A DNA stretch of 64,000 nt from Podarcis erhardii (GCA_964252035.1 OZ176207.1), one strand, 5' to 3'. Counted from the first letter of the stretch, positions 441 to 61,549 are shown. Translations and numbers: made by a program. Notes: a model not told the origin generated them from the sequence alone.

Positions 441-2357
441 GTAGGTTCTCGTGCAAACTAAATCATAGAAAAATAAACTCCAATCTTGCCTATCTTTTTG
501 TATGGTAAAAGCTACAGCATCTGCTCTACAGCAACTTGTCCTCAATGAGAGGTTTGCAAATCTTGTATTGCAAACCCTCTTCCACACTGTTAACACTATG
601 GGAGTGCTTTCAGAATGGTTCCATTGAGGTAGCGATATGCATAATGTCACATTGAATTTCTTTCTATTTAGATCTTTCATGAAAGATTAGTCAGCAGGAC
701 AAACCTAGTTTCTGGTTCATGAATTGTTGTGTGTACTTCACTAGCACATTTACACAAAACCATTCTGAACTCATTTCTCAGGGAAGTAAACATTATATGA
801 AAATATGCCCCAAATCAGAAAAGATAAAAACAGAGGGTGGCATCCAATGTCATGTGAGTGGACTTCTCCTTCCATGCTTCTTCCTGAAGCACCATGCCCA
901 CACCCCAACTTCTCTGCAGCCCTCCAGAACAGATTTGGGGGGGTATAGGAGGGAGGATGAATCTGTTCCACCAGCAGTTTAGGTTCCCCCTGGCAGATGA
1001 ACACTGTTGGACTGCACCCCAAAATGAAATAGCTATTTAAATCATCTTTGGATGTATATTCATTTAATAGACTAGATTCTCCATATAACCTTTAAAACTT
1101 TTCAAATAAAATATTAATTAGCTTAAATAATAAAAGTAGTTTCTTTACTAGAGTTCTTTATATCAGGGATTGAACTGTAGAAAAACCCTAAACAGCTATC
1201 TGTTACACTGTATACCTATGCCAGTGCATTCATTTATTTTGTTTTTGTTTTTTGCCACTCTTAGCATGACAAATATTTTTCTTTGTTTCAGGCACTGAGT
1301 ATTGTAAAAAGAAATGAGTATTTTCTATAATGGAGTGGGTCCAGATTAAATATTTTAAAGACACTTAAAACAATATGCAACTTTCCTAGTACTTGGAAGT
1401 CTTCTTGCAATATGTACATGCCACTGATTAGTGCTACATTCATTATGTGCAATGTAAAATTTCATCATTACATTGACTATTTTCCGCACAGATGTATGCC
1501 AATCACTTTACACGGTTAACTTTACAAATGTTCAGGACTTGTAATTAGCTGTTTTCACTTGGTCACTATTCAAAATCACATTATATGAATCTGTGTTCCT
1601 TTTTTTAGAATTATGGAAACTTTTAACATTTTATTTATTTATATATTTGAGAGATTTCTATACTGCCCAGTACCAAAAATGGCCACAGGGCAATGTGCAA
1701 CAAAACAATACAATGCAGTACATAATAAGTAACATAAATGTTAAAAAAATCCCAGATCCATATTAACTTGGCTGTAGATTTGTAGTCCCCTGTGTAGGTT
1801 TTACCAATATATTGCTCTTGTGGTGCAGTAAGTAATTGGTTTTGCTTCATAAGCTCCCATTGTTGCTCTAATTCCAGGTTGTGGACCTTGGGGTTCTAGT
1901 AAAAAACAATGTAGATTCTACAAGCCTAAAGTCTGCCTTTGTATGTATGATAAAACCTTGCAGGCTGTGCTTGCTCATATTCAAACATTTTCAGTCATGA
2001 GGGCTGCAAAAGTGCTTTATGTAAAAAGGAAAGCTAAGATCCTCAGGAGTCTAGATAGTTCAGCATAGCAGATTCTACCCCATACTCCAAGCTCATGGAA
2101 GATGCACTGTTAATCATGATGGATAGTTTCAAATTATTTAAACTTAGAGGTGACTAACCTGTGGCCTTCAGATGTTGGATTCACTCATTCACTCATGGAC
2201 AGTGATGTGATGTGGAATGCTTCGTCCATCCCTACTAGATTTATTTTATTTTACAAAATGTATATACTATTTGATTGTAAAGTAGCAACAACCACCCTCA
2301 AAGTGCTGTACTATAGCCTTGTGCTTAACTATAGTTTCAAACTGTTAATTTATAAAA

Positions 2358-2490
2358 TCACAGAATCATTGATAGCCAATGGTTATCTAGTCCAATGCTC
2401 TGCAATGCAGGAATCACAGCTCAAAAAATCCCTGACAGATAGGTATCCAATCTCTGTTTAAAAACCTTCAATGTAGGAGAGTCCACCAGC
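2358..2490 (-). mobile_element. CR1 3' end fragment
   Basis: Reverse complement gives gaaggtttttaaacagagattggata…ctgtcaggga…attctgtgat, a CR1-type tail. Confidence 0.6.
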
Positions 2491-2948
2491 TTCTGTGGGT
2501 ACATGTTTGTGACATGTACAGGCACCACCCTCACGTCATGTGTGACTGCGCATATGCATTGTATCAGGAACCCAGAAGTAGGGGAAGAGACCTGAAGGGC
2601 CTCAACAAAGCCTTGCTGTGCCTCCAGCTTGCAGGGAGACCTTCCCTGGCCCAAAAAGGATGTCCTCTTTGAGCTCTGGGAGGGTCTCCTGGTGAGTCAG
2701 AGGTGCAGTGGGGTGCTTCCCACTTAAGGGCATTTCATTTATGTGTGCAGAGGGCCAGCACAGGCTCCCCTGTGTAAGTGGGGAGTCACCTATATATGAA
2801 AAAAAGCCTGAATAAAAATGCCATATATCGCGTTTACCCAAGTCCATAGGTAAACATGTTTACTTTCCCTAAAAGTATTTGTTTTCTGGTTTTTGAGTTC
2901 AGTCTCTTCTTTCTGCTGACCTTTGATATATTTTCTAAAATAATGTAG

Positions 2949-3029
2949 AACACAAGAGTGCTGAAGCAGAACCAGAAGAGGAAGATGAAATGGACACTTT
3001 GCTACGTCAAGTTCTTGAATCAGAGTTTG
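2949..3029 (+). CDS. ASPH: ASPH acidic exon EHKSAEAEPEEEDEMDTLLRQVLESEF
   Basis: tgtag/gtatga, 81 nt, phase 1-1, open and acidic. Resembles recalled human EPQNIEDEAKEQIQSLLHEMV. Confidence 0.85.
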
Positions 3030-3938
3030 GTATGAATGAATATTTTCCCATGAACTTCTAAAAAGAAATTTTAGAACTAACCAATTATTTTGATCAGTTA
3101 AAAATTGTATGTAGCTAGTTACCGATCTTTCAAAACATTCTCGCTGCTGGTTGGAAATAACTGTTTGCTTTCCAAAATGGAACAATGACTGTAGTGGCTA
3201 ATGACCTGCCCCTCACATGTTTGTCCAATGATACCAGTTTATAGAATTATCCCATAATAACAGTAAATGCTTGAGGCGCAATATCAGAGCTAAGCACTCT
3301 TAAGATCCACTGATTTCTGTGAAAGGAGTAATTTTAAACTAGTAGGTTAGATGTGGACATTTCCCTCCACAAGCAGAAGGGCTCCTTCATTTGCAGATGG
3401 GACTCCAGTCCAGCAGAGGCTTTCATTCCACTTTACTGGAAAAGGGGAAGAAGACGATTTTTGGCAGGACCTAGAAGACCAGGGTTCAAATCCCCACTAT
3501 GCTATGAAGCTCACTGGAGGACCTCGGACCAGTCACTGTCTCTCAGCCTAGCCTACTACACAGGGTTATTGTGAGGATAGCATGAAGAGGGGGAGAACTG
3601 TGTAGCTTTCTTGAGTTCCTTGAAGGAAATAAATGTAATAATAATAATAAATGAGTAGTCCCCTGTGCAACTTCCCATACTGTTCTTCAGGGTCTCCTAA
3701 TACTCTGGAACAGATTTTCAAGGTGCACAGAGAGCTGTCTGAGGAAGCGGGGGTCTCAAAAAATGGTGTCCTTCCCCTTCCTCCAGCGGGAGCATCCAGT
3801 TAGCAAAATTCCATCTGGATCCAACCCAGTGGGCCTTAAATGTGTTTGGATTGTACCAATGATCTGTTTAGAAGGGCGGTGATTACAGAATGCAATTGAG
3901 ACTGTTCTGCTGATATGCTGTTTTTCTAACATTTTAAG

Positions 3939-4085
3939 AAAAAATAAATGAAGCGGATGAAGAAACAGATTTTCAGGAGGAGAATAGTGAAACACCTGAA
4001 GTTTCCACAGAACAGGATGTCTATGATGGAGACCTTGAAGATAAAGGGCCAGAAGTATTAGAAACACCAGAATCTGACTATGAAG
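3939..4085 (+). CDS. ASPH: ASPH acidic exon EKINEADEETDFQEENSETPEVSTEQDVYDGDLEDKGPEVLETPESDYE
   Basis: ctaac branch motif, ttttaag/gtacct, 147 nt, phase 1-1, very D/E-rich. Confidence 0.85.
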
Positions 4086-4106
4086 GTACCTGAAATTTTA
4101 AGAGTA

Positions 4107-4451
4107 CAGTGGTGCCTCACAAGACGAAATTAATCCATTCCGTGAGGCTCTTCGTATAGCGTTTTTTTCGTCTTGCAAAGCAAGCCCATTGACAGCTTAG
4201 CGGATTAGCGCTATTAGCGGTTTAGCGGCTTTTAGCGGCTTATCAGCTTAGCGGATCAGCTGATAAGCGGCTTAGCTGCTTAGAAAAAGGGGGGGAAAGG
4301 GGGGAAAACCCGCAGGAACTTGCAAGACATTTTCGTCTTGCAAAGCAAGCCCATAGGGAAATTCCTTTTGCGAAGCGCCTCCAAAACGGAAAACCCTTTC
4401 GTCTAGCGGGTTTTCCATCTTGCGAGGCGTTCGTCTTGCGGGGCACCACTG
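4107..4451. mobile_element. Tc1/mariner (Tigger-like) MITE family A, copy 1
   Basis: TIR cagtggtgcc.c.caagacgaa, TA TSD. Sits 21 bp after an exon donor. Confidence 0.85.
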
Positions 4452-5287
4452 TATTCAGCGTGTTCTTTTTCTTTTTTAGAAAGAGATTAAGAAGGTGGTG
4501 AGATATTTTACTTAGACTTTTATGGAATAAATATATGTCTTTGAGTTCATTCAGTTCAGTCGAACGTAGTATATCATCAAGTCTGTTTTAAATGACTTGT
4601 ATACTGTATTGTGACCCAGTTTGGACATAATTGGAAGGAAAGTTTAGTGAATGGAAGAAGACTGCAGCATCATGTGTGCCCTTCCTTCTGCTTTCCCCCT
4701 CTCATGCATGAATTCCTCCCATGTTCTTGTATTTAGGCATACATCTAACCTGAAGCCTAAGATCCTGAAAATTGTGGTTTTATCAGGATGTTCAAAATAT
4801 TTAGAAGTATGCCTGGATTCATTTTAACCTGAATTGATGATGCTCAAACCAAGATGCAGGGAGGCATGAGGAAATTCACTTGCAATAAAAGAAGTATTGA
4901 AGAACAGCACAAATGGTTCTGTGGTCTACTCCAGTCCTTACATTCTAGTTCTAGGATTATGTCTACTCCAAGCATATGTGTCAAAAAACTGTTAGATTAA
5001 TTGGGCACTTTTCTGAAAATTGACAGTATTTTAACTTAGCAGTAGGTGGTATTCAACAAAGTATTTGCAATAGCATAATGAGCTTTCCTTGCTCTATTCT
5101 CCCCTACCTCCCACAAGCCCTGCCCTGTCCCCAAATGTGCTCTGGAAGGTTGGGGAAAATCACCGAACAGCTTTAGGAGACATATAGAGGGAGAAGTGCC
5201 TGACGAAATATTTTTCCTAGTGTTACACTGAATACAATGTTTTATGTATCTTCAAAAAGCAAATATTTCCCTTATTTTTCATTTCAG

Positions 5288-49814: not shown

Positions 49815-50317
49815 TGTCAGACTCGAGGGATTCTCTCCTCCCCCGGTAGCATCAAGGATCAAAGAAGAAACAAGAAAATTCATATTTGTGGTTTTATTCA
49901 GTAATCATGGAGCAAGGAAAACAATCCAGTCCTTAACTCCATGGTGATGTTGCTCACTCTGAGCCCATCCCCTTTCTCCAGCAACAGCCCGTGGCTCTAT
50001 GGGAGGCTTCAGGAGTCAAATGTCGTTGAGCCCTTCGCTCTTGAATTCTAAGTGAGCGACGAGTACTCGGTGGTGGTGGAGCTTCTGTTCTCTCCAAGGA
50101 AGTCTCTGCTGGCATTTCTCCAACTCCCCCTCCTTCTCCTAAGATCTCATAATTTGGCAGCTCTGCGTTCTGCTGTAATGCAATCCTATCTCCCTCTTCT
50201 CTTGAAACTACTGGAGAAGGAGGGGTGACTCCCCCCCACTACCCCTCCTCCTCCAAGGGAAGCAGAGGAGAAGGAGGAGGCGATTCCCAAACCTCTTCTT
50301 CAGTCCAATCCCTGACA
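49815..50317 (-). mobile_element. Solo LTR (503 bp) of a third Gypsy-like family
   Basis: tgtcag...ctgaca termini. TSD TGTAC at 49810-49814 and 50318-50322. AATAAA on the - strand at 49893-49898. Confidence 0.88.
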
Positions 50318-50890
50318 TGTACATAAGATCATTAGAAGATCGGGCCCAAGGCCCATCCAGTCCAACAACCTGCTGTTTGCACAGTGGCCAAACAGCCACC
50401 TGTGGGAGGCCTGCAAGCAAGACATGAGTGCAACAGAACTCTGCCCACCAGTCTTCCTGGTGTTGACACACACACACACACACACACACACACTCATGTA
50501 ACTGAATCAGTTGCAACCTTTGTATACCAAGCTATTTAGATTTATAAGAAACTTGTACAGAATTTACAGAGATACTATGTTTTTGTCCTACTATGTTTTT
50601 TGTTCAAATTGTTAACAATGAAAAAATGTACTGTGGATGGGCTTTCTCATAATTTGGAAGGCTTTTCCCATCAATCCCTCTTTGCGTGGAATCAATATTT
50701 GTTTTTGGAATTAGAAGGTCTGTGGACTTGTAATAGACTTAAATAAACTTATGAATTTTACAGAGAGAGAATTTTCAAGTGTTTGAATAACTTTGAAGGT
50801 TAACGAAGGAGAATTTAAATGTTGATTAATCTTTTGTTTTAAGAATTCAGATTCCTGGTGCTTAAGTTGTGGTTTCCCCCCTCCTTCTAG

Positions 50891-50982
50891 GAAGAAAAAA
50901 TGAAAATGCATGCAAGAGTGTTCCCAAAACATGTGCCTTATTGGAACGATTTCCAGAGGCCACTGGATGCAGAAGAGGACAG
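50891..50982 (+). CDS. ASPH: ASPH exon (G)RKNENACKSVPKTCALLERFPEATGCRRGQ
   Basis: ttctag/gtacta, 92 nt. Confidence 0.95.
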
Positions 50983-51895
50983 GTACTAACTGACATAGAG
51001 GGGAAGAGAGAAGTGGAGTGGGGAGAGAGATGTTATAGGGATTGTTGAGTGTTTAATGTGCATAACAGGCCATTGTGCATATTCTCCAGGCCTCATTGAG
51101 AATGTGCACATTATATTTCAGTAAAGAGGGGATTGTGCACATTTCCTGGTTATTATGCATCTTGGGAAATGTGCATATTGTGGCTTAATTTTTAACATTC
51201 TCTTGCCATTATGCATAATTCCCAACAGGCCTTTGGGAATGTACATATATTGACTGCATTTTGTACGTTCCCAGGACAATATGCACATTATCTGATCTGT
51301 ATGCATAGTCTCAAGGAAACCTGCCTTTTTTTCTATTTCTTGTTCAGAAGTGTGCAATCTACACTCCCCAGGTTGCTTCTGGCCCACTGCATGGCATCTA
51401 CCTGGGTCACAACACTACTGATCACCTAAGTCCCCCCCCCCATGTAGTTCTCCTTTCACCACTCTCAGCTGTTTCCCAGTCAGCTGAGCAGCACAAGGGG
51501 GGTCATATAGAGATGCAAGTTTTAAACTTTCCTTCCCACTCCTACAATTCTGATAGAAATACAATCCCCGCCCCTCGCCCCTTATTAAGTGTGCTCCTAC
51601 ACACGGCAACAAACCATTTTTGGTGTGACCTGAGGGTGGGATTGTATTGGAGCTCTAAAGTAACTCTAGGAGATTCAGCTCTAATTAAAGCTCCTATCAT
51701 GTGCTTTGGAGAAGTTAAAGAACCTTTATATCAAGGTTCCTGGACATAGTTATGAACAGGCTTGCTAACACAAGATGACATAGCAGTGCTGGCTTGTCAG
51801 CCTGGATTGGTTTGAACACAGTCCTATACTCTCTGCAAGTTAATGAACTGTTGTTGTTTTTTTAAAAAAACCACAAACTATGCCTCTCTCTGCAG

Positions 51896-52029
51896 ATCAA
51901 ATATTCTGTCATGCACCCAGGGACTCATGTCTGGCCTCACACAGGGCCTACAAATTGTAGGCTGAGGATGCATCTAGGCTTGGTGATTCCAAAAGAAGGG
52001 TGCCAGATTCGGTGTGCTGAAGAAACAAG
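51896..52029 (+). CDS. ASPH: ASPH catalytic exon IKYSVMHPGTHVWPHTGPTNCRLRMHLGLVIPKEGCQIRCAEET(R)
   Basis: tgcag/gtatcg, 134 nt. Contains HVWPHTGP with the first Fe-binding His. Confidence 0.97.
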
Positions 52030-52272
52030 GTATCGCCCTCCTCCCCTATCCTCCGGTCTGGGGTTTATGGTGGGCAAGTTCATGTACTATAAGAGTGGGG
52101 ACAGGAGCCAAAGGGGAAGAGCTCCCCAGCAAACAGAGTCAGTACTCTGTTTAGGGAAGCTTTTAATGTTTAATAGATTATTGTATTTTAATATTCTGTT
52201 GGAAGCCTCCGAGAGTGCCTGGGGAAACCCAGCCAGATGAACCTTAACAATGGCTTCCCTCCTCAGCTCTTG

Positions 52273-52790
52273 GAAATGCTGATCCAGTTGTGTGTATGAT
52301 TCTGAACTGCTGACCCGGTGTATGGAAATTGTGAAAAAGGCAAATTCCATCCTAGGGCAAAACAAAATAAAAAAATTCCTTCCAGTAGCACCTTAAAGAC
52401 CAACTAAGTTAGTTCTAGGTATGAGCTTTCGTGTGCATGCACACTTCTTCAGATACACTTCTTTCGTGTGCATGCACACTTCTTCAGATACACTTCAGAT
52501 GTGTATCTGAAGAAGTGTGCATGCACATGAAAGCTCATACCTAGAACTAACTTAGTTGGTCTTTAAGGTGCTACTGGAAGGAATTTTTTTATTTTGTTTT
52601 GACTATGGCAGACCAACACGGCTACCCATCTGTAACTGGATCCATCCTAGGGATTATTAGAAAAGGACTTGAAAACAAAGCTGCCAACATCATAATGCCA
52701 TCACACAAATCTATGGTGCAACCACTTTTGGAATACAGTGTACAGTTCTGATCACCTCACCTCAAAAATTGTATGCTAGAGCTGGAACTG
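52273..52790 (+). mobile_element. CR1 LINE RT C-terminal fragment, interrupted by the Penelope insert
   Basis: aaaaaggcaaattccatcctagggattattagaaaagg…ttggaatacagtgtacagttctgatcacctcacctcaaaaa (K-A-N-x-I-L-G-I-I and LEYxVQF motifs of CR1 ORF2). Confidence 0.7.
52358..52640. mobile_element. Penelope-like element pLTR remnant with inverted duplication and minimal hammerhead motifs
   Basis: 101-bp inverted arms at 52358-52458 and 52501-52601, one mismatch. CTGAAGA-stem-GAAA cores. PLE-type tail cagaccaacacggctacc. 12-bp TSD tccatcctaggg at 52346-52357 and 52641-52652. Confidence 0.8.
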
Positions 52791-53477
52791 TTACTATTGT
52801 AGAAACCCAGTTAGTGGTTTTCGTGGGGTGGGATGGGAAGGGAATCACAAGTGCCAATCATCTTCCTAACATGTAAAAAAATAATAATACATTTTCTGGG
52901 GAATAGGCTTTACTATTTTGAAGGCAGGATTTTTTTCCAGCAATTAATAATGTGATTGCAGCTACTTCCACCAGAAATTTTGGACACTTGCCAGCATATA
53001 CCTAATTTAAATACTGCACCACACATGTCAGTTTGTGGCAGCCGTTAGCTCCTATTGACTAGTCATTGACAATAATATTTGTTTCCAGGAGTTTGAGCTG
53101 AGTTAGGTGCAAAGGGATGTTGCTCAGAAATTTGATAATGAGAAATTTAATGAATGTTTAGTTTCTCCTAGTAATTGTTTGTCATTTCCATTCCAAGTTT
53201 TTACTTCTTACAAAAAAGAAAGCCATTACACAATCATAATATATTACTGCAGAAAAGCCCTCCAAAAACCTTACCCAGCCCTTTTACAGGGATAAACATG
53301 ATCTAGATCAGATGCCGCAATTCAAAATGCAATATGAAATATGACAATACAAATAATTTAAACTTAATAAGCTGTCAAAGGAGAGTTCCATATAATACAG
53401 GAGTGTCTAGTGGTAAGAGATGTGCATTAGTTGATGCAACCAACATAGCCCAGTGTTGACATAATCCTAATTGTACG

Positions 53478-53886
53478 TGTGATGGGATGATGAGCTGCTT
53501 GTGCGTAAAAGCTTAGTCCCTCAGAGCTTGGGCATGGTTCTCAAAACTCTGTCTTAAGCGGAGCCCCTTAAACATGACTCCCTTAATCGCTGGCAGAATC
53601 CGACAGTGGGCGATTGTGGAATCTGCTCCAACATAAAAGTTCCTTAACGGAAACGCGTCTTCGGGATTCTCGGCGCGACAGTTTCCGGCGAGGAGTGGGT
53701 GTACCTATGGGGGGTCCTGAGACTTCTCCACTGTTTTCACTAGAAGTCTCTCGGAGCCCTCCCTCCGACTCACTTTCTCTCTGAGCTCCTTCTCTCCCCC
53801 TGCTGGTACCTTCCTCTGCTGCCGAGTCTCTCTTAGCGTCCGAGAGCCCTTCCACCGCCTGCCTTTCCGATGGCAGTTCCCTGACA
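53478..53886 (-). repeat. 3' LTR of the Gypsy element
   Basis: Preceded on the - strand by purine tract ggggggggaggtgga (PPT, about 53887-53901). Confidence 0.97.
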
Positions 53887-53933
53887 TCCACCTCCCCCCC
53901 CAGGGCCCCCTTCACCCCCTCCCGCCCCCTCAT
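53583..53933 (-). CDS. Candidate accessory ORF (116 aa) starting just upstream of the PPT and running through U3 of the 3' LTR
   Basis: True ATG at 53933, directly after an in-frame TAG. Acidic and Ser-rich, then basic motif RRKLSRRESRRRVSVKELLCW shared with the other LTRs. Confidence 0.5.
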   Translation of the reverse strand: MRGREGVKGALGGEVDVRELPSERQAVEGLSDAKRDSAAEEGTSRGREGAQRESESEGGLRETSSENSGEVSGPPIGTPTPRRKLSRRESRRRVSVKELLCWSRFHNRPLSDSASD

Positions 53934-56900
53934 CTATGGGCGGTGAGGACGGAAACCCCCGGAAAGAAGCTCCCTCATCGTCAGAGGACTCGAACACTTC
54001 TCTCCACTGACTCCCGTCTCTTCTTCCCGAGTACTCCTCCTCATCGGAGTCTATTCCCTCTTCCAGCCCTGATTCTGGGAACCCTTCGAACTCCTCTTCC
54101 TCATCGGTGGTGCCGAAGTGTTCCCTCCTGAACCGTGTCACCGGCTGAGGTTTCCTTGGGAACCGTTGATGAAACGTTTCTATTAAAACCTCGTCATTGA
54201 CCTCTTCTGCCGGTACCCATGTGTTCTCTGACTCCGGTTCTCCTTCCCATTCTACCAAATACTCCACGTGATTCCCCTTCCACCTGGAATCGACGATTTC
54301 TGCCACATGATTGTTGCGTTCCCTTTCTTCTATGACTGGTGTTTGAGTAACCTCCCTCTCACGTCCCCCCCACTCCCGCCCCTCTCGGTACGGCGACAGT
54401 AAGGACCTGTGAAATACTGGGTGCAGTTTCATGTGGTTGGGCAACCTGAGTTTGAATGCCACTGGGTTGACCTGTTGTATCACCTCAAATAGTCCCAGCC
54501 GTTTAGGTTTCAATTTCTTACACCCGCCCTTGAACGGCAGCCCTTGGGTGGATAACCACACCTGGTCCCCCACCCTTATGGTTTCACCTTCCCGTCTGTT
54601 TCTGTCTGCTTGCTTCTTGTATTCTTCTTTGGCCCTCTCTAAATTAAGTTGGAGCTGCCGGTGGATCGCTTCCATCTCTTCTACAAAGTGTTCCACTGCC
54701 GGGACACTCCATCTTTCCCCTCCTTCTCCTGGAAATGCCCTGGGATGACACCCATAATTTGCCAGGAAGGGACTCATCCCTGTGGACACATGCTCCGCGT
54801 TGTTGTAGGCAAATTCTGCCAGAGCCAACTTATCTACCCAATCATTTTCTCTGTCATTAACATAACACCTCAGGTATTGTTGTAGAATACCGTTTGCCCT
54901 TTCCGCCTGCCCATTTGTTTCTGGGTGTCGGGCAGTCGAAAAATTGACCTCTACGTGCAGTAAGCTCATGAGCTTCCTCCAGAACCTGGAAGTAAATTGT
55001 TTCCCTCGGTCTGAGACCACCCTCAAGGGGGCGCCATGCAACCTAAAAATATGTTTTACAAACAATTTGGCGGTTTCTTCCGCTGTGACCACATGCGAGC
55101 AGGCTATAAAGTGGCACATCTTGGTTAATAGGTCTACCACCACCATGACAGCTGTTTTCCCCTTGGATTTTGGCAGATCCGTCATAAAATCTATGGATAC
55201 TGCCTCCCATGGCCTTTCTGGTGTGGGTAAGGGTTCCAGTAGCCCCGCCGGTGCCAGCCTCTCCCCTTTTGCCCGCTGGCATCGGTCGCACCCCCTTACA
55301 TATTCCCGTACGTCTTCCCTCACCTTGGGCCACCAAAACTCCCTGGTAACCAACAACATGGTTTTGTGTTGCCCGAAGTGCCCCGCTGTGGGGCTTTCGT
55401 GCAATTGTTTGAGTACCCGGCCCCTCAGTTCTCCTTCGGGTATGTACAGTGCCCCCTTGTAATACAACGCTCCGTTCCTTTCCTCAAAACCCCCTGTGTT
55501 CTCTCCCCCTTCCCGGAGTCCTCTGAGCTTATCTTGGGCGTATACATCGTTCTCGGTTCCCTCTACCAGTTCTCTCGGCCCCACCAATGCCGCCCCACAC
55601 ACCCAGTGGTCCTCGGGGATGATATGTCTCTCCTCTGGCGCTCCCTCCCCCTCTAAATACTCTGGTTTTCGAGAGAGAGCGTCCGCTCTGACATTCTCCG
55701 GCCCTGGCATGTAGCAAATTTCAAAATGGAATTTGGAGAACTCCTGTGCCCATCTCACTTGTCTCTGGTTCAGTACTCGGGCAGTTCTCCAGTATTCTAG
55801 ATTTTTGTGGTCGGTGCACACTTGGACCTTGTGCTGCGCTCCAATCAGCAAGTGTCGCCATCTCCGGAACGCCTCATGAATGGCGAGTAGTTCTCGGTCG
55901 TACACGGTGTAGTTCCTCTCGGACTTGTTCAGTTTCCGCGAGAAGAAGGCACACGGTCTCCATTCCGACGTATCCTTTCCCGGCTGAAGAAGCACCGCCC
56001 CCACCGCGCGGTCTGATGCATCTGTTTCTACTCTCATCGGTTGTTGCAGATCCACGTGCAAAAGTTGTTCTTCCGACGCGAACGCCTTCTTTAACCTTTC
56101 GAACGCCCGCTGCGCCTCTTCCGTCCAGACAAATTTCTTCTTGCTGCTGAGACAATCAGTGATGGGCGCCGTTAAGTGGGCGAAGTTCTTGATGAACTTC
56201 CGGTAGAAGTTCCCGAACCCCAGGAACCTTTGCACGTCCTTCTTTGTCCTCAGTGTCTTCCATTCCAGTACCGCTTGAACTTTGCTGGGATCCATGGCCA
56301 ATCCCTTGTCTGACAAACGGTACCCCAGCAATTCCACCTCTCTGGTATGAAACTGGCACTTCTCCAGTTTCACCCACAGCTGGTTTGCTTGCAGTCTGCT
56401 CAGTACCTCTCTTACGTCCCGCACATGCTGCTCCTCATTCTCTGAGTACACCAATACGTCATCTAAAAATGTCACACAGTTTTTGTAAAGTAAAGGTCCC
56501 AGGACGTGATTCATGAATGATTGAAAACAGGCTGAGCCCCCCTGTAGACCGAAGGGCATAACGAGGTACTCAAAGGCCCCCAAGGGGGTGAACATGGTAG
56601 TTTTCCATTCATCTCCCTTTCTCATTCGTATCAGGTTATACGCCCCCCTCAGGTCCAGTTTGGTAAAATTTTTCCCCTTCCTCACTCGGGTCAAAATGTC
56701 ATCGATTCTGGGCATGGGGAAGGTCACGGGTTCTGACACTGCATTTACGGCCCGGTAATCCACTACCAACCTGGGTTTATCCGTGTCTTTTTTGTCCACA
56801 AAGAACACTGGACTACCCCCCACCGCTCGTGACTCCCTGATGAAACCTCGTTTGAGGTTCTTGTCAATGAACTCCCTTAACTCCTGCATCTCCCTGTCGG

Positions 56901-57492
56901 ACATGGCGTACAGCTTGCCTACTGGCAGCTGGGCTCCTGGGAGTAGGTTAATTTGACAGTCAAAGGGTCTATGCGGGGGCAGTTTATCTGCTTCTCTTTC
57001 GCTGAAGACATTACCCAGGTCGGCGTATTGTCGTGGTACCTTCCCTTTATCTGCTACTTCCATCCCTGCTAGGGTGGCCTGGGCTCCTCCCTGAGCCTCT
57101 CCCCCCTTGCAGTGTGCTAGGCAATGTGCTGACCCAAAGGAAACTACCCGCTGGTGCCATCCCACTAGCGGATCATGCAGTGCTAGCCAGCTCATTCCCA
57201 ATATGATGGGCGCTCCTCCCAGGGTGGCCACATTAAACGCTATCACCTCCGTGTGTCTTGCCACCTTCATTATCATGGGGACAGTTTGTTGGTTAACTTC
57301 TCCACCCAACAGTTCCCTCCCATCAATCGTTGTCACCTGCAAAGGGTTACTTAAAGGGATAGTCTGTATCTGGTGTTCAGCTGCAAACTCCTTGCTCATA
57401 AAATTGCAGGAGCTGCCTGAGTCCAATAGCGCCTTTATCTTTAGCGGATGTCCGTTTGGTAGCTCTAGCACCACCTCTACGACAAGCGCTGG
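53833..57492 (-). CDS. Pol polyprotein, uninterrupted part: aspartic protease (LLDSGS), RT (FLDD), RNase H (ETDASD), integrase (HHCC + DDE core), C-terminal chromodomain
   Basis: ORF-track 53833..58071 has no stop. All motifs are visible in the translation. Its first ~193 aa derive from the nested LTR read antisense. Confidence 0.95.
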   Translation of the reverse strand, partial: PALVVEVVLELPNGHPLKIKALLDSGSSCNFMSKEFAAEHQIQTIPLSNPLQVTTIDGRELLGGEVNQQTVPMIMKVARHTEVIAFNVATLGGAPIILGMSWLALHDPLVGWHQRVVSFGSAHCLAHCKGGEAQGGAQATLAGMEVADKGKVPRQYADLGNVFSEREADKLPPHRPFDCQINLLPGAQLPVGKLYAMSDREMQELREFIDKNLKRGFIRESRAVGGSPVFFVDKKDTDKPRLVVDYRAVNAVSEPVTFPMPRIDDILTRVRKGKNFTKLDLRGAYNLIRMRKGDEWKTTMFTPLGAFEYLVMPFGLQGGSACFQSFMNHVLGPLLYKNCVTFLDDVLVYSENEEQHVRDVREVLSRLQANQLWVKLEKCQFHTREVELLGYRLSDKGLAMDPSKVQAVLEWKTLRTKKDVQRFLGFGNFYRKFIKNFAHLTAPITDCLSSKKKFVWTEEAQRAFERLKKAFASEEQLLHVDLQQPMRVETDASDRAVGAVLLQPGKDTSEWRPCAFFSRKLNKSERNYTVYDRELLAIHEAFRRWRHLLIGAQHKVQVCTDHKNLEYWRTARVLNQRQVRWAQEFSKFHFEICYMPGPENVRADALSRKPEYLEGEGAPEERHIIPEDHWVCGAALVGPRELVEGTENDVYAQDKLRGLREGGENTGGFEERNGALYYKGALYIPEGELRGRVLKQLHESPTAGHFGQHKTMLLVTREFWWPKVREDVREYVRGCDRCQRAKGERLAPAGLLEPLPTPERPWEAVSIDFMTDLPKSKGKTAVMVVVDLLTKMCHFIACSHVVTAEETAKLFVKHIFRLHGAPLRVVSDRGKQFTSRFWRKLMSLLHVEVNFSTARHPETNGQAERANGILQQYLRCYVNDRENDWVDKLALAEFAYNNAEHVSTGMSPFLANYGCHPRAFPGEGGERWSVPAVEHFVEEMEAIHRQLQLNLERAKEEYKKQADRNRREGETIRVGDQVWLSTQGLPFKGGCKKLKPKRLGLFEVIQQVNPVAFKLRLPNHMKLHPVFHRSLLSPYREGREWGGREREVTQTPVIEERERNNHVAEIVDSRWKGNHVEYLVEWEGEPESENTWVPAEEVNDEVLIETFHQRFPRKPQPVTRFRREHFGTTDEEEEFEGFPESGLEEGIDSDEEEYSGRRDGSQWREVFESSDDEGASFRGFPSSPPIDEGAGGGEGGPGGGGGCQGTAIGKAGGGRALGR

Positions 57493-58314
57493 TGTCAGGG
57501 GCTCAGGAGCTGAGGCACAGGGAAGATGGGAGATGGAGAGCGAGGGGGAGGAATCCGAAGGGAGCGTAGGAGGGGACAGTGGTCCGAGGGATTCCATGAG
57601 CCTCTCCAGCGAATCGGAAGATTCACAGAAGGGAGCGCCAGTGGCCAGGGGCAGGGGGGTCCCAAGGGGAACGCCCCAGGAGCAAGGGGGCAGCAGGGAC
57701 TCCCAGAGCAGTAGTTGGAAATCAGGACCAGCTTCCCCACCAGAGCAGAGTGGGGGGGAAGAGTCCCAGGCATCGGGGCCAGTGCTTTCCCCACCAGGGA
57801 GAGGAGACGAGGCAGAGCCTACCACGCCTCCCTCGGAGAGTCGGACAACGGAAGGGAGGTCAGATCCGGCCAGTGTCACGGAAGAGGGAAGCAGTGATAG
57901 AAGTAGTGTAACGGTTAGGAGAAAGGTCACTGGGTTGGCGCGAGAAGCAAGTTCAAATGTACAGGAGCGTGGGACAGCAGAGAGTGAGGATTGGGAACCG
58001 GGTCCTAAAGCACGCCGGAGGCAGGGGGAGGAGCTAAGCGACTCAGCGTCGGAAGAGTCCAGAAAGGGCAATGCCCCAGAGGGCAGGAGGACCCAGAGGA
58101 GAAGAGAGCAGCGCAGGAGGTGGAGCAGGGCTAGGATCTTAAACTGGTGTGGAAGGGGCGGAGACTCAGACGGGACTTCGCCGATCTAGAGTCTAGACTT
58201 AGGGCTGCACGCTCTGGCTTTGAAATGGAAATTAAACTTCAATAAAGACTTTTGTACATAACATCAGCCTGGCGTTGGTACTCTGTGAGCTGGGACCTAG
58301 AGGCAGCTCTGACA
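57493..58314 (+). mobile_element. Solo LTR (822 bp) of a different Gypsy family, nested in opposite orientation in the gag/pol overlap
   Basis: tgtcag...ctgaca termini. TSD GCTGG at 57488-57492 and 58315-58319. ATTAAA at 58231 and AATAAA at 58241. Excision restores Pol EPPRPALVVEVVLE and the Gag stop. Confidence 0.93.
57533..58189 (+). CDS. Candidate LTR-encoded ORF (218 aa from ATG 57533) in the nested solo LTR
   Basis: Frame open from the LTR 5' end to TAG 58189. E/S/P-rich, with C-terminal RRTQRRREQRRRWSRARILNW. Confidence 0.5.
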   Translation: MESEGEESEGSVGGDSGPRDSMSLSSESEDSQKGAPVARGRGVPRGTPQEQGGSRDSQSSSWKSGPASPPEQSGGEESQASGPVLSPPGRGDEAEPTTPPSESRTTEGRSDPASVTEEGSSDRSSVTVRRKVTGLAREASSNVQERGTAESEDWEPGPKARRRQGEELSDSASEESRKGNAPEGRRTQRRREQRRRWSRARILNWCGRGGDSDGTSPI

Positions 58315-58337
58315 GCTGGTCTTGGGGGTTCAGGCTT

Positions 58338-58406
58338 GGGCACATTAACTGATCTTTGGCCTGGCTGCTGTGCCCCGATGCTGGCAACCAGGCGTTGGCT
58401 TTTACC
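58338..58406 (-). promoter_or_regulatory. Putative -1 ribosomal frameshift signal (G GUA AAA, 6-nt spacer, H-type pseudoknot)
   Basis: Stem 1 gcctggttgc/gcagccaggc and stem 2 gggcaca/tgtgccc. Pol lies in the -1 frame, which has a TAA just upstream of the heptamer. Confidence 0.7.
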
Positions 58407-59394
58407 TGCTCCTTAACCCCCTCTTCTTCACCCCCAACAGCTCCCGCCATTCCTTGCCATCCCTTCCTTTGAGGGCAGACTCTGGCAAAGTGACCTGGCT
58501 GTTGGCAGAGGAAACATTTCTTGGCGCTCTTTCCCTCCTTCTTCCGCCCTTCGTTGGTGTTTGAAACTCCGCGCGCGCGCGCTGTTCCAATCTCCATCGG
58601 TTCTACTGGCGGGGAATGCTGCTCTGGCATCTCTGGAATGCAGAACTCACTCCAACGTTCCCCTTTCCCTTCCCGCTTCTCCAAGGCTCTCGCCTCCTGG
58701 CCCACTCCTATGGCAAGCGCGGATTTAGTCAGCTGGTCCATAGACTCCGCCCTGGGCGCACGGGAAAGTTCATCCTTCACTGCCGAGGATAAACCTTCTT
58801 CGAACAGCATTTGTATCGGGTCCGCAGACAGGTCCCACCCCAATTTATGGATCAGCATGGTAAACTCTGTCCAGTACTCTCAGATGGATCGGTTCCCCTG
58901 TTTACACGCCATCAACTGTCTGCGCACCACCCCTTGTTCAATCTCGCTGGAAAACATCAGGTCCATGGCGCGAAAAAACTTTCTCGAGTCTTTTAGAGCG
59001 TCATTATTTGCTGCCATCAGGGGCCTCACCCAGTCTTTCGCCCCCCCCCCCTTCGAGATGCCCAATGACAAACGCCACTCTCGATTCCTCATCGGGAAAG
59101 TCATCAAACTGCAGATTGAGGGCGTATTGCATCTCTGTCCTAAAGGCTTGATAATTTCTGGGATCACCCCAAACTTTTGTACCAACCCTGGCACCTTCCT
59201 TGCGAGTGGGGTGGTTTTTCCCTTGTCTGCATCCTGAGCCCGCCTCTCTTCAAGCCTCGCCGTTTGCAGCACTAGCTGGAGCTCCAACACCCTGTACCTT
59301 TCTTCCAGGCTTGGACCCGCTCCAGCTCCTCCTGCGTCTCCGGCTCCGGTTGGGTTGCTCATGATGCCTCTCTTTGCACAAGCGGCTTTCAGGG

Positions 59395-59405
59395 ACTGTC
59401 GGATT
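59395..59405 (-). promoter_or_regulatory. Non-tRNA primer-binding site, complementary to LTR 59527-59537 (self-priming type)
   Basis: On the - strand, aatccgacagt lies 2 nt after the 5' LTR. No TGG tRNA-type PBS is present. It is the perfect 11-nt complement of actgtcggatt within the LTR. Confidence 0.75.
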
Positions 59406-59407
59406 GC

Positions 59408-59816
59408 TGTGATGGGATGATGAGCTGCTTGTGCGTAAAAGCTTAGTCCCTCAGAGCTTGGGCATGGTTCTCAAAACTCTGTCTTAAGCGGAGCCCCTTA
59501 AACATGACTCCCTTAATCGCTGGCAGAATCCGACAGTGGGCGATTGTGGAATCTGCTCCAACATAAAAGTTCCTTAACGGAAACGCGTCTTCGGGATTCT
59601 CGGCGCGACAGTTTCCGGCGAGGAGTGGGTGTACCTATGGGGGGTCCTGAGACTTCTCCACTGTTTTCACTAGAAGTCTCTCGGAGCCCTCCCTCCGACT
59701 CACTTTCTCTCTGAGCTCCTTCTCTCCCCCTGCTGGTACCTTCCTCTGCTGCCGAGTCTCTCTTAGCGTCCGAGAGCCCTTCCACCGCCTGCCTTTCCGA
59801 TGGCAGTTCCCTGACA
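59408..59816 (-). repeat. 5' LTR of the Gypsy element
   Basis: Direct repeat of 53478-53886. On the - strand it runs tgtcagggaa...catcaca. Confidence 0.97.
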
Positions 59817-61549
59817 GTACGATATCATGTTGTGATTATCACATTATGGTACTTTTCATTCACAATATACTGTGGCATACACACAACAAAAACCCACATT
59901 TATTTGCATTTCAGTGGTAGGTTGAGCAATTGATCCCAGAAACCAATTAATGGCCCTGGCAATTCTGTAGCTGTTTTGTTTTGTTTTGTTTGGGTGTGTA
60001 GCAATCTCTTTCAAGGCTATGTAAATGACAGAATCCTCTTCAAATTTTCGACAGCAACACTTCTCTTGCACTAGTGTTTTTCTCAAGAATCAGAACTTTT
60101 GGTGGCTAATTAATGCAATTTTTTTTAAATAAAAACAAACAAACCTTTCCCCCCTTTAAATAGAGTCACTTTCTTATGCAATTTTGTCTCCTGCTTTCCA
60201 CCAGAATTAGACAGAAGCTAAATTTAAGAACTGGCATGATGTTGCCTATAATCCTGCATGCCAGTTTACAGGACGACTATTTTAATCCTTGGGTTTCGTA
60301 TATCTGGATTAGAATTAACATTTATTCCCACTTTTCTATTAAAACAACACTTGAAGCAGCTATCCAAAGTTCTGGTATGTAAATTTAGGATCAAGATTCC
60401 CCATAGCCATCACTTTTTAAAATCAGTTTAAACAAATGAGTTTTCTTTCTTGATTATGACACTCCCACTGTATTGTATTTTCCATTAGTCAAAGTATCAG
60501 CCAAAATATTCAGTGCTATGAATTTAGTTGAAAGAAAGTCCCTTTTAAGTAGGGTGAACAAACCACTTCTGAACATCTTTCCAATTGTGAAGCTTTAATC
60601 CTTTCCTCTAATTGCTTCCTCTGTTTATTGCTCTCTCTTGAATTTTCTTCTCTTTAAATCTTTATGGTAATGTGATGTCCAGGGCTGTTTGCAGTATTTA
60701 AAGCTCAGTCTCATACTCATCAGAGATTAATTATGAGAAGACTGTTGCCTGCTCTCATTGTAGAACTAGGGCAATGTTGGAGTGAGGTGAGCAATGGATA
60801 TTCTTGCCTATTGCTTTCTGCTTCCGTAGGATAATCCCTGAGTTGAGAACTGGGGTACAAGCTCTACTTTCAGAGTACTAATCAGAGACTTTGCCAGTCG
60901 CAGACTTTGGAGGAATTAAGAGATCGTCAGGATGCTCCTAAGGTTTCCTGTTCACAGGATCATGAAAAAAGGAGGAAATGGTGGTTAGAAATATAATGTG
61001 TTCTGTGTAAACTTGAACCTCATGGGGGAAGCCTTGCAGTGTCCCATCAAGAGGCCAAATTAATGGTGTGAATCAAAGAGAAAACTCATCTGACCCAAAG
61101 AGGTCTGTCATACTTGTGTATGGTAGAACCAGTGAGGCAAGGCAGCATCTCTTTCCAAGAAGGTCGCTGTCACTGGAGAATTATTATTTCAAAGAGGTCC
61201 AAGGTTGTCACATCCTGCAAACTGAAATTGGGGGACGAGGGAAAGGAAAAGTGGGCCTCAGTGGCAGCTAGATTAGACAACACTGGGCCAAGCTCAGGAA
61301 ATATGCTATGAACTGATATAATGCAACTCTGCAAAGGGCACGATGAGACCTCTGCAAATACTAAAAAGCCGGCCATATTTGCACTGATCTTCACCATTGT
61401 GTAGGAAACTGTTTTCAGAAATAGTGCTTCTTGAATGACTCAATCAACATATATCTCACAGACTGAAGACATGCCATAAGCCAAGTTTCTAGATTTCTAG
61501 TTGATTTTAAAAAATAGGTAGATGATGACCGTATTTTTGTCACATCGAG

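What the first reader, a model, noticed from the sequence alone, without database searches (positions are those of the whole stretch)
49815..59816. Three different Gypsy LTRs all carry a long U3 ORF ending in a shared basic peptide: candidate LTR-encoded accessory protein
Seen in sequence: (1) Host element, ATG 53933 to TAA 53583 (-), 116 aa, ends PRRKLSRRESRRRVSVKELLCWSRFHNRPLSDSASD*. (2) Nested solo LTR, frame open from its 5' edge, ATG 57533 to TAG 58189 (+), ends GRRTQRRREQRRRWSRARILNWCGRGGDSDGTSPI*. (3) Solo LTR 49815-50317 (-), 121 codons from 50316 to 49954 with one internal TAG (50239-50241), ends STRRSLRIQERRAQRHLTPEASHRATGCCWRKGMGSE*. All three start in frame 2 of the LTR, are E/S/P-rich, and share RR-x5-E-x-R followed by a W near the stop. 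LTR 1 (53628-53690) and LTR 2 (58085-58147) align ungapped at 11 of 21 residues, and 9 of those 11 use different codons (e.g. CGC/AGG, GAA/GAG, TCC/AGC). That pattern fits selection on protein rather than DNA. Established analogies for U3 ORFs are HIV nef and MMTV sag. I do not recall such an ORF for vertebrate sushi-type chromoviruses. Inference: an acidic protein with an NLS- or nucleic-acid-binding-like tail, translated only from the 3' LTR because U3 lies upstream of the inferred TSS.
Basis: partly seen in the sequence, partly recalled or inferred. Interest (0 to 1): 0.85.

Follow-up and report, generated by a model that had tools for sequence, protein, structure and literature searches.

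The report
Pol gene tail encoded inside LTR
The "extra gene" seen in these lizard retrotransposon LTRs is real coding sequence under selection, but it is the last 100-230 codons of the element's own polymerase/integrase gene, which runs on into the 3' LTR, not a separate nef- or sag-like accessory gene.

Summary

**Selection on two families.**
- Against diverged copies, dN/dS is 0.21-0.27 in the nested LTR (57493-58314) and 0.23 in the host LTR. The other two frames give 0.8-1.8.
- Third codon positions carry about half of all differences, and every indel in the nested-LTR ORF is a multiple of three.

**It is the tail of Pol.**
- About 19 Podarcis muralis Pol proteins, and a contiguous 1307-aa ORF on contig L005, run from the chromodomain through the polypurine tract into this peptide.
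- The reading frame covers all of U3, the TATA-like box and the first ~21 nt of R, which holds the Tf1-type self-primer.
- The ATG at 53933 is not conserved.
- In the window copy, pol and tail are one base out of register at the 8-G run 53894-53901.
- For the nested-LTR family the link to pol is inferred, not shown.

**Shared motif and third LTR.** The basic motif shared by the host and nested LTRs beats shuffles (P about 3e-4). The third LTR (49815-50317) shows no significant similarity and no evidence of selection.

**Precedent.** Plant CRM, Beetle and Bingo chromoviruses also extend their ORF into the 3' LTR. Other first-reader notes on other pieces of this genome record the same read-through (s1-254807, s1-220679, s1-232446).

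The parts
53478..53886 (-). 3' LTR of the host chromovirus (409 bp, TG..CA, TSD CGTAC at 53473-53477)
   Evidence: 100% identical to 59408-59816; TSD checked
59408..59816 (-). 5' LTR of the host chromovirus (TSD CGTAC at 59817-59821). It carries the same untranslated copy of the tail frame.
53833..57486 (-). Host pol ORF (PR-RT-RNaseH-IN-SH3-chromodomain plus acidic tail). In this copy it stops 17 codons inside the 3' LTR, in LTR frame 1.
   Evidence: Pfam hits; ORF; frames
53583..53885 (-). LTR-encoded Pol tail (100 codons plus stop, LTR frame 2). The listed ORF starts at ATG 53933, 47 nt upstream of the LTR.
   Evidence: In frame with Pol in about 19 P. muralis proteins and in L005/L006. dN/dS 0.23, differences by codon position 13/12/33.
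53894..53901 (-). 8-G homopolymer in the polypurine tract where the pol frame and the tail frame fall out of register by one base in this copy
   Evidence: Alignment with L005/L006. Contigs of four runs include a form one letter shorter here (table 4).
53632..53639 (-). TATA-like box inside the codons of the conserved ELLCW part of the tail
   Evidence: it begins 32 nt upstream of the start of the self-primer
53597..53607 (-). Self-primer and inferred start of R, inside the last codons of the tail. The same 11 nt lie at 59527-59537 in the 5' LTR.
   Evidence: Exactly complementary to PBS 59395-59405. It covaries with the PBS in L005.
59395..59405 (-). Primer binding site for Tf1-type self-priming
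57493..58314 (+). Nested solo LTR of a second chromovirus family (822 bp, TSD GCTGG at 57488-57492 and 58315-58319), inserted antisense at the host gag-pol junction
   Evidence: Contigs with the empty site exist (joint 57487 to 58315).
57494..58189 (+). Frame-2 coding region of the nested LTR (231 codons plus TAG). Inferred Pol tail of that family.
   Evidence: dN/dS 0.21-0.27 against L001-L003, all indels in threes, third-position excess. Self-primer-like 58168-58178 and AATAAA at 58241.
49815..50317 (-). Solo LTR of a third family (503 bp, TSD GTACA). Frame-2 ORF 49954-50316 is broken by TAG 50239-50241.
   Evidence: No evidence of selection and no significant motif similarity.
58232..59362 (-). 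Host gag (Retrotrans_gag, CCHC knuckle). In-frame stop at 58880-58882; the C-terminal end runs into the nested LTR.

Best explanation
In this clade of lacertid Tf1/sushi-type chromoviruses the pol gene does not end before the 3' LTR.

**What is encoded.** After the integrase chromodomain comes a long acidic, Ser/Glu/Gly-rich tail that looks disordered. It is read through the polypurine tract, all of U3, the TATA-like box and the first ~21 nt of R, which is the Tf1-type self-primer. It ends in a conserved Arg-rich motif followed by Leu-x-Trp.

**Why every LTR carries the frame.** Reverse transcription copies U3 to both ends. Every 5' LTR and every solo LTR therefore carries an untranslated ghost of this coding segment, open from LTR base 2 in the frame in which pol enters. 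Only the 3' LTR copy is part of the genomic mRNA upstream of the poly(A) site.

**Status of each step.**
- Shown for the host family.
- Inferred for the nested-LTR family: coding constraint is shown, the link to pol is not.
- Only analogy for the third LTR.
- In the window copy a one-base length difference in an 8-G run of the PPT separates pol from its tail. This creates the apparent stand-alone 116-aa ORF.

**Function of the tail (inference).** An integrase C-terminal module for nuclear import and/or target tethering, by analogy with the basic C-terminal NLS/targeting segment of Ty1 integrase.
For: **Pol runs into the tail in relatives.**
- P. muralis Pol proteins P0006, P0008, P0013, P0014, P0016, P0020, P0023, P0024, P0026, P0029-P0033 and others run from the chromodomain tail straight into the window's U3 peptide. 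They end at the same C-terminus.
- L005 carries a contiguous 1307-aa ORF (513-4436). Its last 304 nt lie inside an LTR (4133-4540) that is followed by PBS and gag.

**Selection on the LTR-encoded part.**
- Window against L005: dN/dS is 0.23 in the U3 part, equal to the 0.23 of the pol tail just upstream. The shifted frames give 1.3-1.5. Differences by codon position are 13/12/33, chi-square P = 7e-4.
- Nested LTR against L001-L003: dN/dS is 0.21-0.27 against 1.5-1.8 and 0.8-0.95 in the other frames. Third-position share is 0.47-0.53 across the six pairs. The four indel events measure 3, 63, 6 and 3 nt. R-U5 has single-base indels.
- In a neutral simulation conditioned on an open frame, 0.2% of descendants stay open. 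Their third-position share is 0.33, maximum 0.40.

**Read and contig evidence.** Six single-base indel sites are listed in R-U5 of the host LTR and none in its U3 tail. A form one letter shorter at the G-run appears in all four runs.

**Against a separate gene.** ATG 53933 is not conserved in L005/L006.

**Overlapping signals.** The self-primer and PBS are complementary and covary in five copies of two families. This places the TSS about 21 nt before the stop and 32 nt after the TATA-like box.

**Shared motif.** The host and nested-LTR C-terminal motifs are similar at P about 3e-4.
Against: - In the window copy itself, pol and tail are not in one frame.
- For the nested-LTR family no intact 3' end was recovered. 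The two full-length P. lilfordi copies (L004, L008) share several pol frameshifts, including one about 270 nt upstream of the LTR. A separate ORF starting there is therefore not excluded.
- The L001-L003 copies were found by protein search, an ascertainment that the simulation only partly answers.
- There is no RNA, Ribo-seq or peptide evidence. None of the runs is recorded as RNA.
- The third LTR has no supporting comparative data.
- The tail has no Pfam match, and its function is pure inference.
Confidence: 0.8

Rival explanations
1. A separate LTR-encoded accessory protein (nef/sag-like). It would be translated from its own start codon just upstream of the 3' LTR, or from a spliced or subgenomic RNA.
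For: - The window copy has ATG 53933 directly after a stop, giving a 116-aa stand-alone ORF.
- The P. lilfordi annotation calls a 179-aa protein starting at an ATG 224 nt upstream of the 3' LTR in L004.
- L004 and L008 share the frame offset between the chromodomain and this ORF.
Against: - ATG 53933 is not conserved in L005/L006.
- About 19 relatives have the tail fused in frame to Pol.
- The stand-alone ORF found no homologue of its own size.
- The frame is open from LTR base 2 with no conserved internal start.
- dN/dS is the same as in the adjoining pol tail.
- L004 and L008 are decayed copies with at least four pol frameshifts each.
Confidence: 0.07
2. Programmed ribosomal frameshifting at the G-run of the PPT. 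This would yield two Pol isoforms, one with the tail and one without, so the window's out-of-frame arrangement would be functional rather than a defect.
For: - The break lies in a slippery-looking homopolymer.
- Both run lengths are present in contigs of four runs from three organisms.
- The window copy has identical LTRs and an otherwise open 1217-aa pol.
Against: - Many relatives need no frameshift.
- In L005/L006 the run is interrupted by an A, so no conserved slippery site exists.
- The window copy is defective anyway: it has a gag stop and a nested LTR.
- Homopolymer length errors and mutations are common.
- Contig depths at this low-complexity place cannot rank the two forms.
Confidence: 0.06
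3. Chance open frames in purine-rich, T-poor U3 DNA, with the motif resemblance due to Arg/Glu-rich composition and the TATA-like box.
For: - Shuffle tests give only P about 0.09 and 0.10 for the host and third LTRs.
- The antisense frame of the nested LTR is equally open.
- The third LTR has an internal stop, its only relative (L007) is frame-broken, and its motif similarity is not significant.
Against: - The two families for which copies could be compared show dN/dS 0.21-0.27, a third-position excess and in-frame indels.
- A neutral simulation cannot reproduce this.
- This rival survives only for the third LTR.
Confidence: 0.05

Closest known systems
Plant CRM-clade group A chromoviruses (also Beetle and Bingo of Beta vulgaris): the polyprotein ORF extends into the 3' LTR
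   Same: A chromovirus gag-pol/pol ORF crosses the PPT and ends inside the 3' LTR, so the LTR encodes the integrase C-terminus, a putative targeting module (PMC3059260 Fig. 4 legend; PMC3605345).
   Different: - In CRM the LTR encodes the CR motif that replaces the chromodomain.
- Here a canonical chromodomain (PF00385) lies upstream of the PPT.
- The LTR adds a further 100-230-codon tail with no Pfam match. It also overlaps the TATA-like box and a self-primer.
- The host is a vertebrate Tf1/sushi-type clade, not a plant one.
Tf1/sushi group of Ty3/gypsy elements (Tf1, sushi-ichi, the vertebrate V-clade)
   Same: PR-RT-RH-IN-chromodomain order, 5-bp TSD, and self-priming instead of a tRNA PBS (PMC6317226 cites this for yeast and vertebrate members). 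Self-primer/PBS complementarity and covariation were seen here.
   Different: In the library I searched I found no description of members of this group whose pol reads through the whole of U3. Absence from that library does not prove novelty.
Ty1 integrase C-terminal bipartite NLS / targeting domain
   Same: A basic segment at the extreme C-terminus of a retrotransposon integrase, needed for nuclear import and for tethering to the integration target (PMC2490736, PMC7459421, PMC10050235). This is the functional analogy for the Arg-rich end of the tail.
   Different: There is no sequence homology. Ty1 is a copia-type element and its IN tail is not LTR-encoded. No function was tested here.
Retroviral genes overlapping U3 (HIV nef, MMTV sag)
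   Same: Coding sequence occupies U3 of the 3' LTR, so promoter DNA is also protein-coding.
   Different: Those are separate genes with their own start codons and spliced mRNAs. Here the frame is the continuation of pol. No homology. The comparison rests on general knowledge.

Membership tests
Chromovirus (Ty3/gypsy, Tf1/sushi-type) | Pol domain order PR-RT-RNaseH-IN with a C-terminal chromodomain | tested here: met
   Pfam RVP_2, RVT_1, RT_RNaseH, Integrase_H2C2, rve, SH3_Tf2-1 and Chromo, in that order
Chromovirus (Ty3/gypsy, Tf1/sushi-type) | LTRs with TG..CA ends and a short TSD | tested here: met
   TGTCAGGG...ACA termini and 5-bp TSDs for all three LTRs
Chromovirus (Ty3/gypsy, Tf1/sushi-type) | Self-priming: the 5' end of R is complementary to the PBS | tested here: met
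   An 11-12-nt exact complement with covariation in the window, L005, L001, L003 and L004
Elements whose pol ORF extends into the 3' LTR (as in CRM group A, Beetle, Bingo) | One continuous ORF from integrase across the PPT into the LTR | tested here: met
   Met in relatives: L005 ORF 513-4436 with the LTR from 4133, and about 19 P. muralis Pol proteins. Not met in the window copy itself, which has a one-base frame break at 53894-53901.
Elements whose pol ORF extends into the 3' LTR (as in CRM group A, Beetle, Bingo) | The LTR-encoded part evolves as coding sequence | tested here: met
   dN/dS 0.23 (host family) and 0.21-0.27 (nested-LTR family), with a third-position excess
Elements whose pol ORF extends into the 3' LTR (as in CRM group A, Beetle, Bingo) | The LTR encodes the CR motif or chromodomain itself (CRM group A) | tested here: not met
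   The chromodomain lies upstream of the PPT. The LTR-encoded tail has no Pfam match.
U3 accessory genes of retroviruses (nef, sag) | An independent ORF with its own conserved start codon | tested here: not met
   ATG 53933 is not conserved in L005/L006. The frame is continuous with pol in relatives.
U3 accessory genes of retroviruses (nef, sag) | Expression from a spliced or subgenomic mRNA | not testable with these tools
   No RNA run was on record for this stretch. Only contigs were available.
U3 accessory genes of retroviruses (nef, sag) | Sequence homology to nef or sag | tested here: not met
   No Pfam family at E up to 0.1 for any of the three ORFs

The most novel reading that the evidence does not exclude
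The tail is a modular, optionally attached integrase appendage. In some lineages, including the window copy's 8-G form and the P. lilfordi subfamily with a shared frame offset, it would be made by frameshifting at a PPT homopolymer or as a free protein from its own ATG. The element would then tune the ratio of tailed to untailed integrase, or release a small Arg-rich nuclear protein. The same DNA would still serve as PPT, promoter, TATA box and self-primer.
Probability: 0.1. Interest if true: 0.65.

Novelty: new variant of a known kind. Interest (0 to 1): 0.45.

Why it matters
**Dense overlap of functions.**
- The plus-strand primer (PPT), the whole U3 promoter, the TATA-like box and the minus-strand self-primer all sit inside codons under purifying selection.
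- Promoter evolution and integrase-tail evolution in these vertebrate chromoviruses are therefore coupled.

**Source of annotation error.**
- Every solo or 5' LTR of these abundant families carries a long ghost ORF.
- Gene finders call these as hypothetical proteins. Two such models are in the Podarcis lilfordi annotation.
- A sequence reader can mistake them for accessory genes, as several first-reader notes on this genome did.

**A concrete experimental target.** The Arg-rich/Trp C-terminal motif conserved between two families about 60% identical in pol can be tested for integrase nuclear import or target-site tethering in a vertebrate retrotransposon.

Tried and rejected
- **Stand-alone 116-aa ORF.** A protein search found no homologue of similar size. 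The relatives are all long Pol proteins, which that tool's length window hides.
- **DNA of the P. muralis models.** No DNA could be fetched for P0006 and P0008. The Logan members P0023 and P0024 were used instead.
- **Third LTR.** A representative search with its 94-aa piece gave three spurious repeat-protein hits and one weak LTR-derived ORF (P0039, E = 6e-4). Its contig L007 is a frame-broken relative without pol context, so this family stays unresolved.
- **Full-length nested-LTR-family elements.** The P. lilfordi copies L004 and L008 share at least three pol frameshifts. They cannot show the intact pol/U3 arrangement.
- **Reads.** All runs were Logan contigs of unrecorded kind. This gives no evidence on expression, and no reliable ratio of the two G-run lengths.
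- **Variant table.** The read-laying table showed only 40 of 1048 sites, so a codon-position census from it was not possible.
- **DNA similarity among the three LTRs.** None beyond the shared TGTCAGGG terminus.
- **Pure composition artefact.** Considered, then rejected for two of the three LTRs.
Full report
**1. Anatomy**

The region holds a chromovirus on the minus strand.
- Its LTRs are 409 bp long, at 53478-53886 and 59408-59816. They are 100% identical and flanked by the TSD CGTAC.
- Gag lies at 58232-59362 and carries Retrotrans_gag and a CCHC knuckle.
- Pol lies at 53833-57486, with RVP_2, RVT_1, RT_RNaseH, Integrase_H2C2, rve, SH3_Tf2-1 and Chromo in that order.

Two further LTRs are present.
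- A solo LTR of a second family (57493-58314, plus strand, 822 bp, TSD GCTGG) is nested antisense at the gag-pol junction.
- A solo LTR of a third family lies at 49815-50317 (minus strand, TSD GTACA).
- The three LTRs share only the TGTCAGGG terminus at the DNA level.

The 1412-aa ORF listed at 53833-58071 is pol fused by chance to the open antisense frame of the nested LTR.

**2. The observation**

- The count of 11 of 21 identical residues, 9 of them with different codons, is exact.
- Dinucleotide shuffles alone give P about 0.09, 0.005 and 0.10 for the host, nested and third LTR.
- Composition therefore explains much of the openness. T content is 11-20% and purines 58-67%.

**3. Is it coding?**

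*Nested-LTR family.*
- A protein search with the nested-LTR ORF found three full-length relatives on short Logan contigs (P0001-P0003 on L001-L003) at 53-62% identity. It also found two Podarcis lilfordi hypothetical proteins.
- On the DNA alignment, every indel event inside the ORF is a multiple of three (3, 63, 6 and 3 nt). The R-U5 part shows single-base indels.
- Pairwise dN/dS is 0.21-0.27 in the ORF frame, against 1.5-1.8 and 0.8-0.95 in the two shifted frames.
- Differences fall on codon positions as, for example, 32/40/80. Chi-square P ranges from 2e-4 to 7e-7.

*Control for ascertainment.* These copies were found by protein search, so I simulated neutral descendants at 26% divergence.
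- Only 0.2% stay open.
- Among those that do, the third-position share is 0.33 (maximum 0.40), against 0.47-0.53 observed across the six pairs.

*Host family.* Window against L005, in the LTR-encoded 100 codons:
- dN/dS is 0.23, and differences by codon position are 13/12/33.
- This equals the 0.23 of the pol tail just upstream.
- The shifted frames give 1.3-1.5.

Both frames are therefore translated and under purifying selection.

**4. What it belongs to**

- The stand-alone 116-aa ORF has no homologue of its own size.
- A search with the C-terminal 258 residues of the host Pol found Podarcis muralis Pol proteins of 1275-1344 aa. Their sequence passes from the chromodomain's acidic tail directly into the window's U3 peptide and ends at the same C-terminus.
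- Of the 26 members in their three clusters, about 19 reach the junction. All of those read through it in frame, and 14 run to the same C-terminus.
- Two members have DNA. L005 carries a contiguous ORF (513-4436, 1307 aa) whose last 304 nt lie in an LTR (4133-4540). That LTR is followed by the PBS and the start of gag.

So the U3 ORF is the 3' end of pol.

*The window copy.*
- Its pol frame and tail frame are one base out of register.
- The alignment places the break in the 8-G run at 53894-53901 of the polypurine tract.
- Contigs from four runs, representing three organisms, include a form one letter shorter at exactly this place.
- The ATG at 53933 that heads the apparent stand-alone ORF is not conserved in L005/L006.

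*The nested-LTR family.*
- I recovered two full-length elements, L004 and L008 in P. lilfordi. Their pol is about 57-60% identical to the host's.
- They share several frameshifts.
- Upstream of their 3' LTR the U3 frame stays open for more than 100 codons of acidic sequence. A shared frame offset from the chromodomain lies about 270 nt upstream of the LTR.
- The link to pol in this family is therefore inferred from the host family, not shown.

**5. Overlapping signals**

- An 11-nt segment at LTR positions 280-290 (53597-53607, also 59527-59537) is exactly complementary to the sequence two bases past the 5' LTR (59395-59405).
- The same relation holds, with compensating changes, in L005 and in three nested-LTR-family copies (L001, L003, L004).
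- This is the Tf1-type self-primer, known for the Tf1/sushi group in yeast and vertebrates (PMC6317226).
- It places the start of R 32 nt downstream of the start of a TATA-like box (53632-53639) and about 21 nt before the stop codon.
- Pol thus reads through the PPT, all of U3, the TATA-like box and the self-primer.

**6. The shared basic peptide**

- With composition-preserving shuffles, the host and nested-LTR tails are more alike than chance. P is about 3e-4 on the last 40 residues and 0.008 on whole tails.
- The match falls at the same distance from the stop in both, on the residues most conserved within the nested-LTR family.
- The third LTR is not significantly similar to either (P 0.11-0.74).
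- Its only retrievable relative (L007) is frame-broken.
- The third LTR fits the model only by position and frame.

**7. Mechanism and function**

*Shown.* Coding constraint in two families. Continuity with pol in one family. Overlap with the cis signals.

*Inferred.*
- The tail is an integrase appendage.
- Its Arg-rich end may act in nuclear import or target tethering, by analogy with the basic C-terminal NLS/targeting segment of Ty1 integrase (PMC2490736, PMC7459421, PMC10050235).
- No Pfam family matches the tail.

**8. Comparison with what is known**

- An ORF that extends into the 3' LTR is established for plant CRM group A chromoviruses, where the LTR encodes the CR motif (PMC3059260). 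It is also established for Beetle and Bingo of Beta vulgaris (PMC3605345).
- The present case differs in host clade and in keeping a canonical chromodomain upstream of the PPT.
- It also differs in the nature of the LTR-encoded module and in the added overlap with a self-primer.
- I found no description of this arrangement for vertebrate chromoviruses in the searched library. That does not prove it is unreported.
- It is not a nef/sag-type gene. It has no independent conserved start, no homology, and is continuous with pol.

**9. Earlier notes of this scan**

- Notes on this window about self-priming (s1-244799) and about the nested foreign LTR (s1-244813) agree with what I found.
- Notes on other pieces of the same genome describe pol reading through the PPT and all of U3 (s1-254807, s1-220679, s1-232446).
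- Others read such ORFs as accessory genes (s1-244772, s1-247272, s1-214981).
- I did not examine those loci.

**10. Verdict**

- The accessory-protein interpretation is replaced by a pol tail encoded in the 3' LTR.
- This is a new variant of a known arrangement. Its interest is moderate, and it has practical value for annotation.

Noticed in passing
window 59395-59405 with 59527-59537 / 53597-53607; L005, L001, L003, L004: The Tf1-type self-primer and the PBS are exactly complementary over 11-12 nt. They carry compensating changes in five copies of two families. The primer lies inside the last codons of pol.
   Followed up: yes
window 57487-58315: Contigs from the best-matching organism join 57487 to 58315, skipping 827 nt (the LTR plus one TSD copy). 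Copies of the host family without the nested LTR therefore exist. The nested LTR family has roughly 5-10 times the contig word depth of the host's internal region.
   Followed up: partly
window 58880-58882: The host gag has one in-frame stop codon that splits it into two listed ORFs. Yet the element's LTRs are 100% identical.
   Followed up: partly
window 53833-58071 (minus strand): The 1412-aa ORF in the mechanical list is pol joined to the antisense frame of the nested LTR. That frame stays open for 231 codons because it is the complement of a T-poor coding frame.
   Followed up: yes
L004 10001-10540 and L008 7001-7531 (Podarcis lilfordi); P0009 (Podarcis muralis): Public annotations contain gene models made from these LTR frames (two hypothetical proteins). 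They also contain a chimeric 'vomeronasal type-2 receptor 26-like' model that includes chromovirus integrase sequence.
   Followed up: no
L004 6400-10225 and L008 3200-7006: Two P. lilfordi elements on different chromosomes share at least three pol frameshifts. This suggests that an already defective element was propagated, or that the copies arose by duplication.
   Followed up: partly
L001 1-55 and L002 50-150: Two LTR copies from different runs have the same repeated sequence upstream. These LTRs appear to sit in or next to another repeat family.
   Followed up: no
window 53583-53585: Most contigs of related organisms read the tail's stop codon as TGA instead of TAA. The change preserves the stop.
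   Followed up: partly
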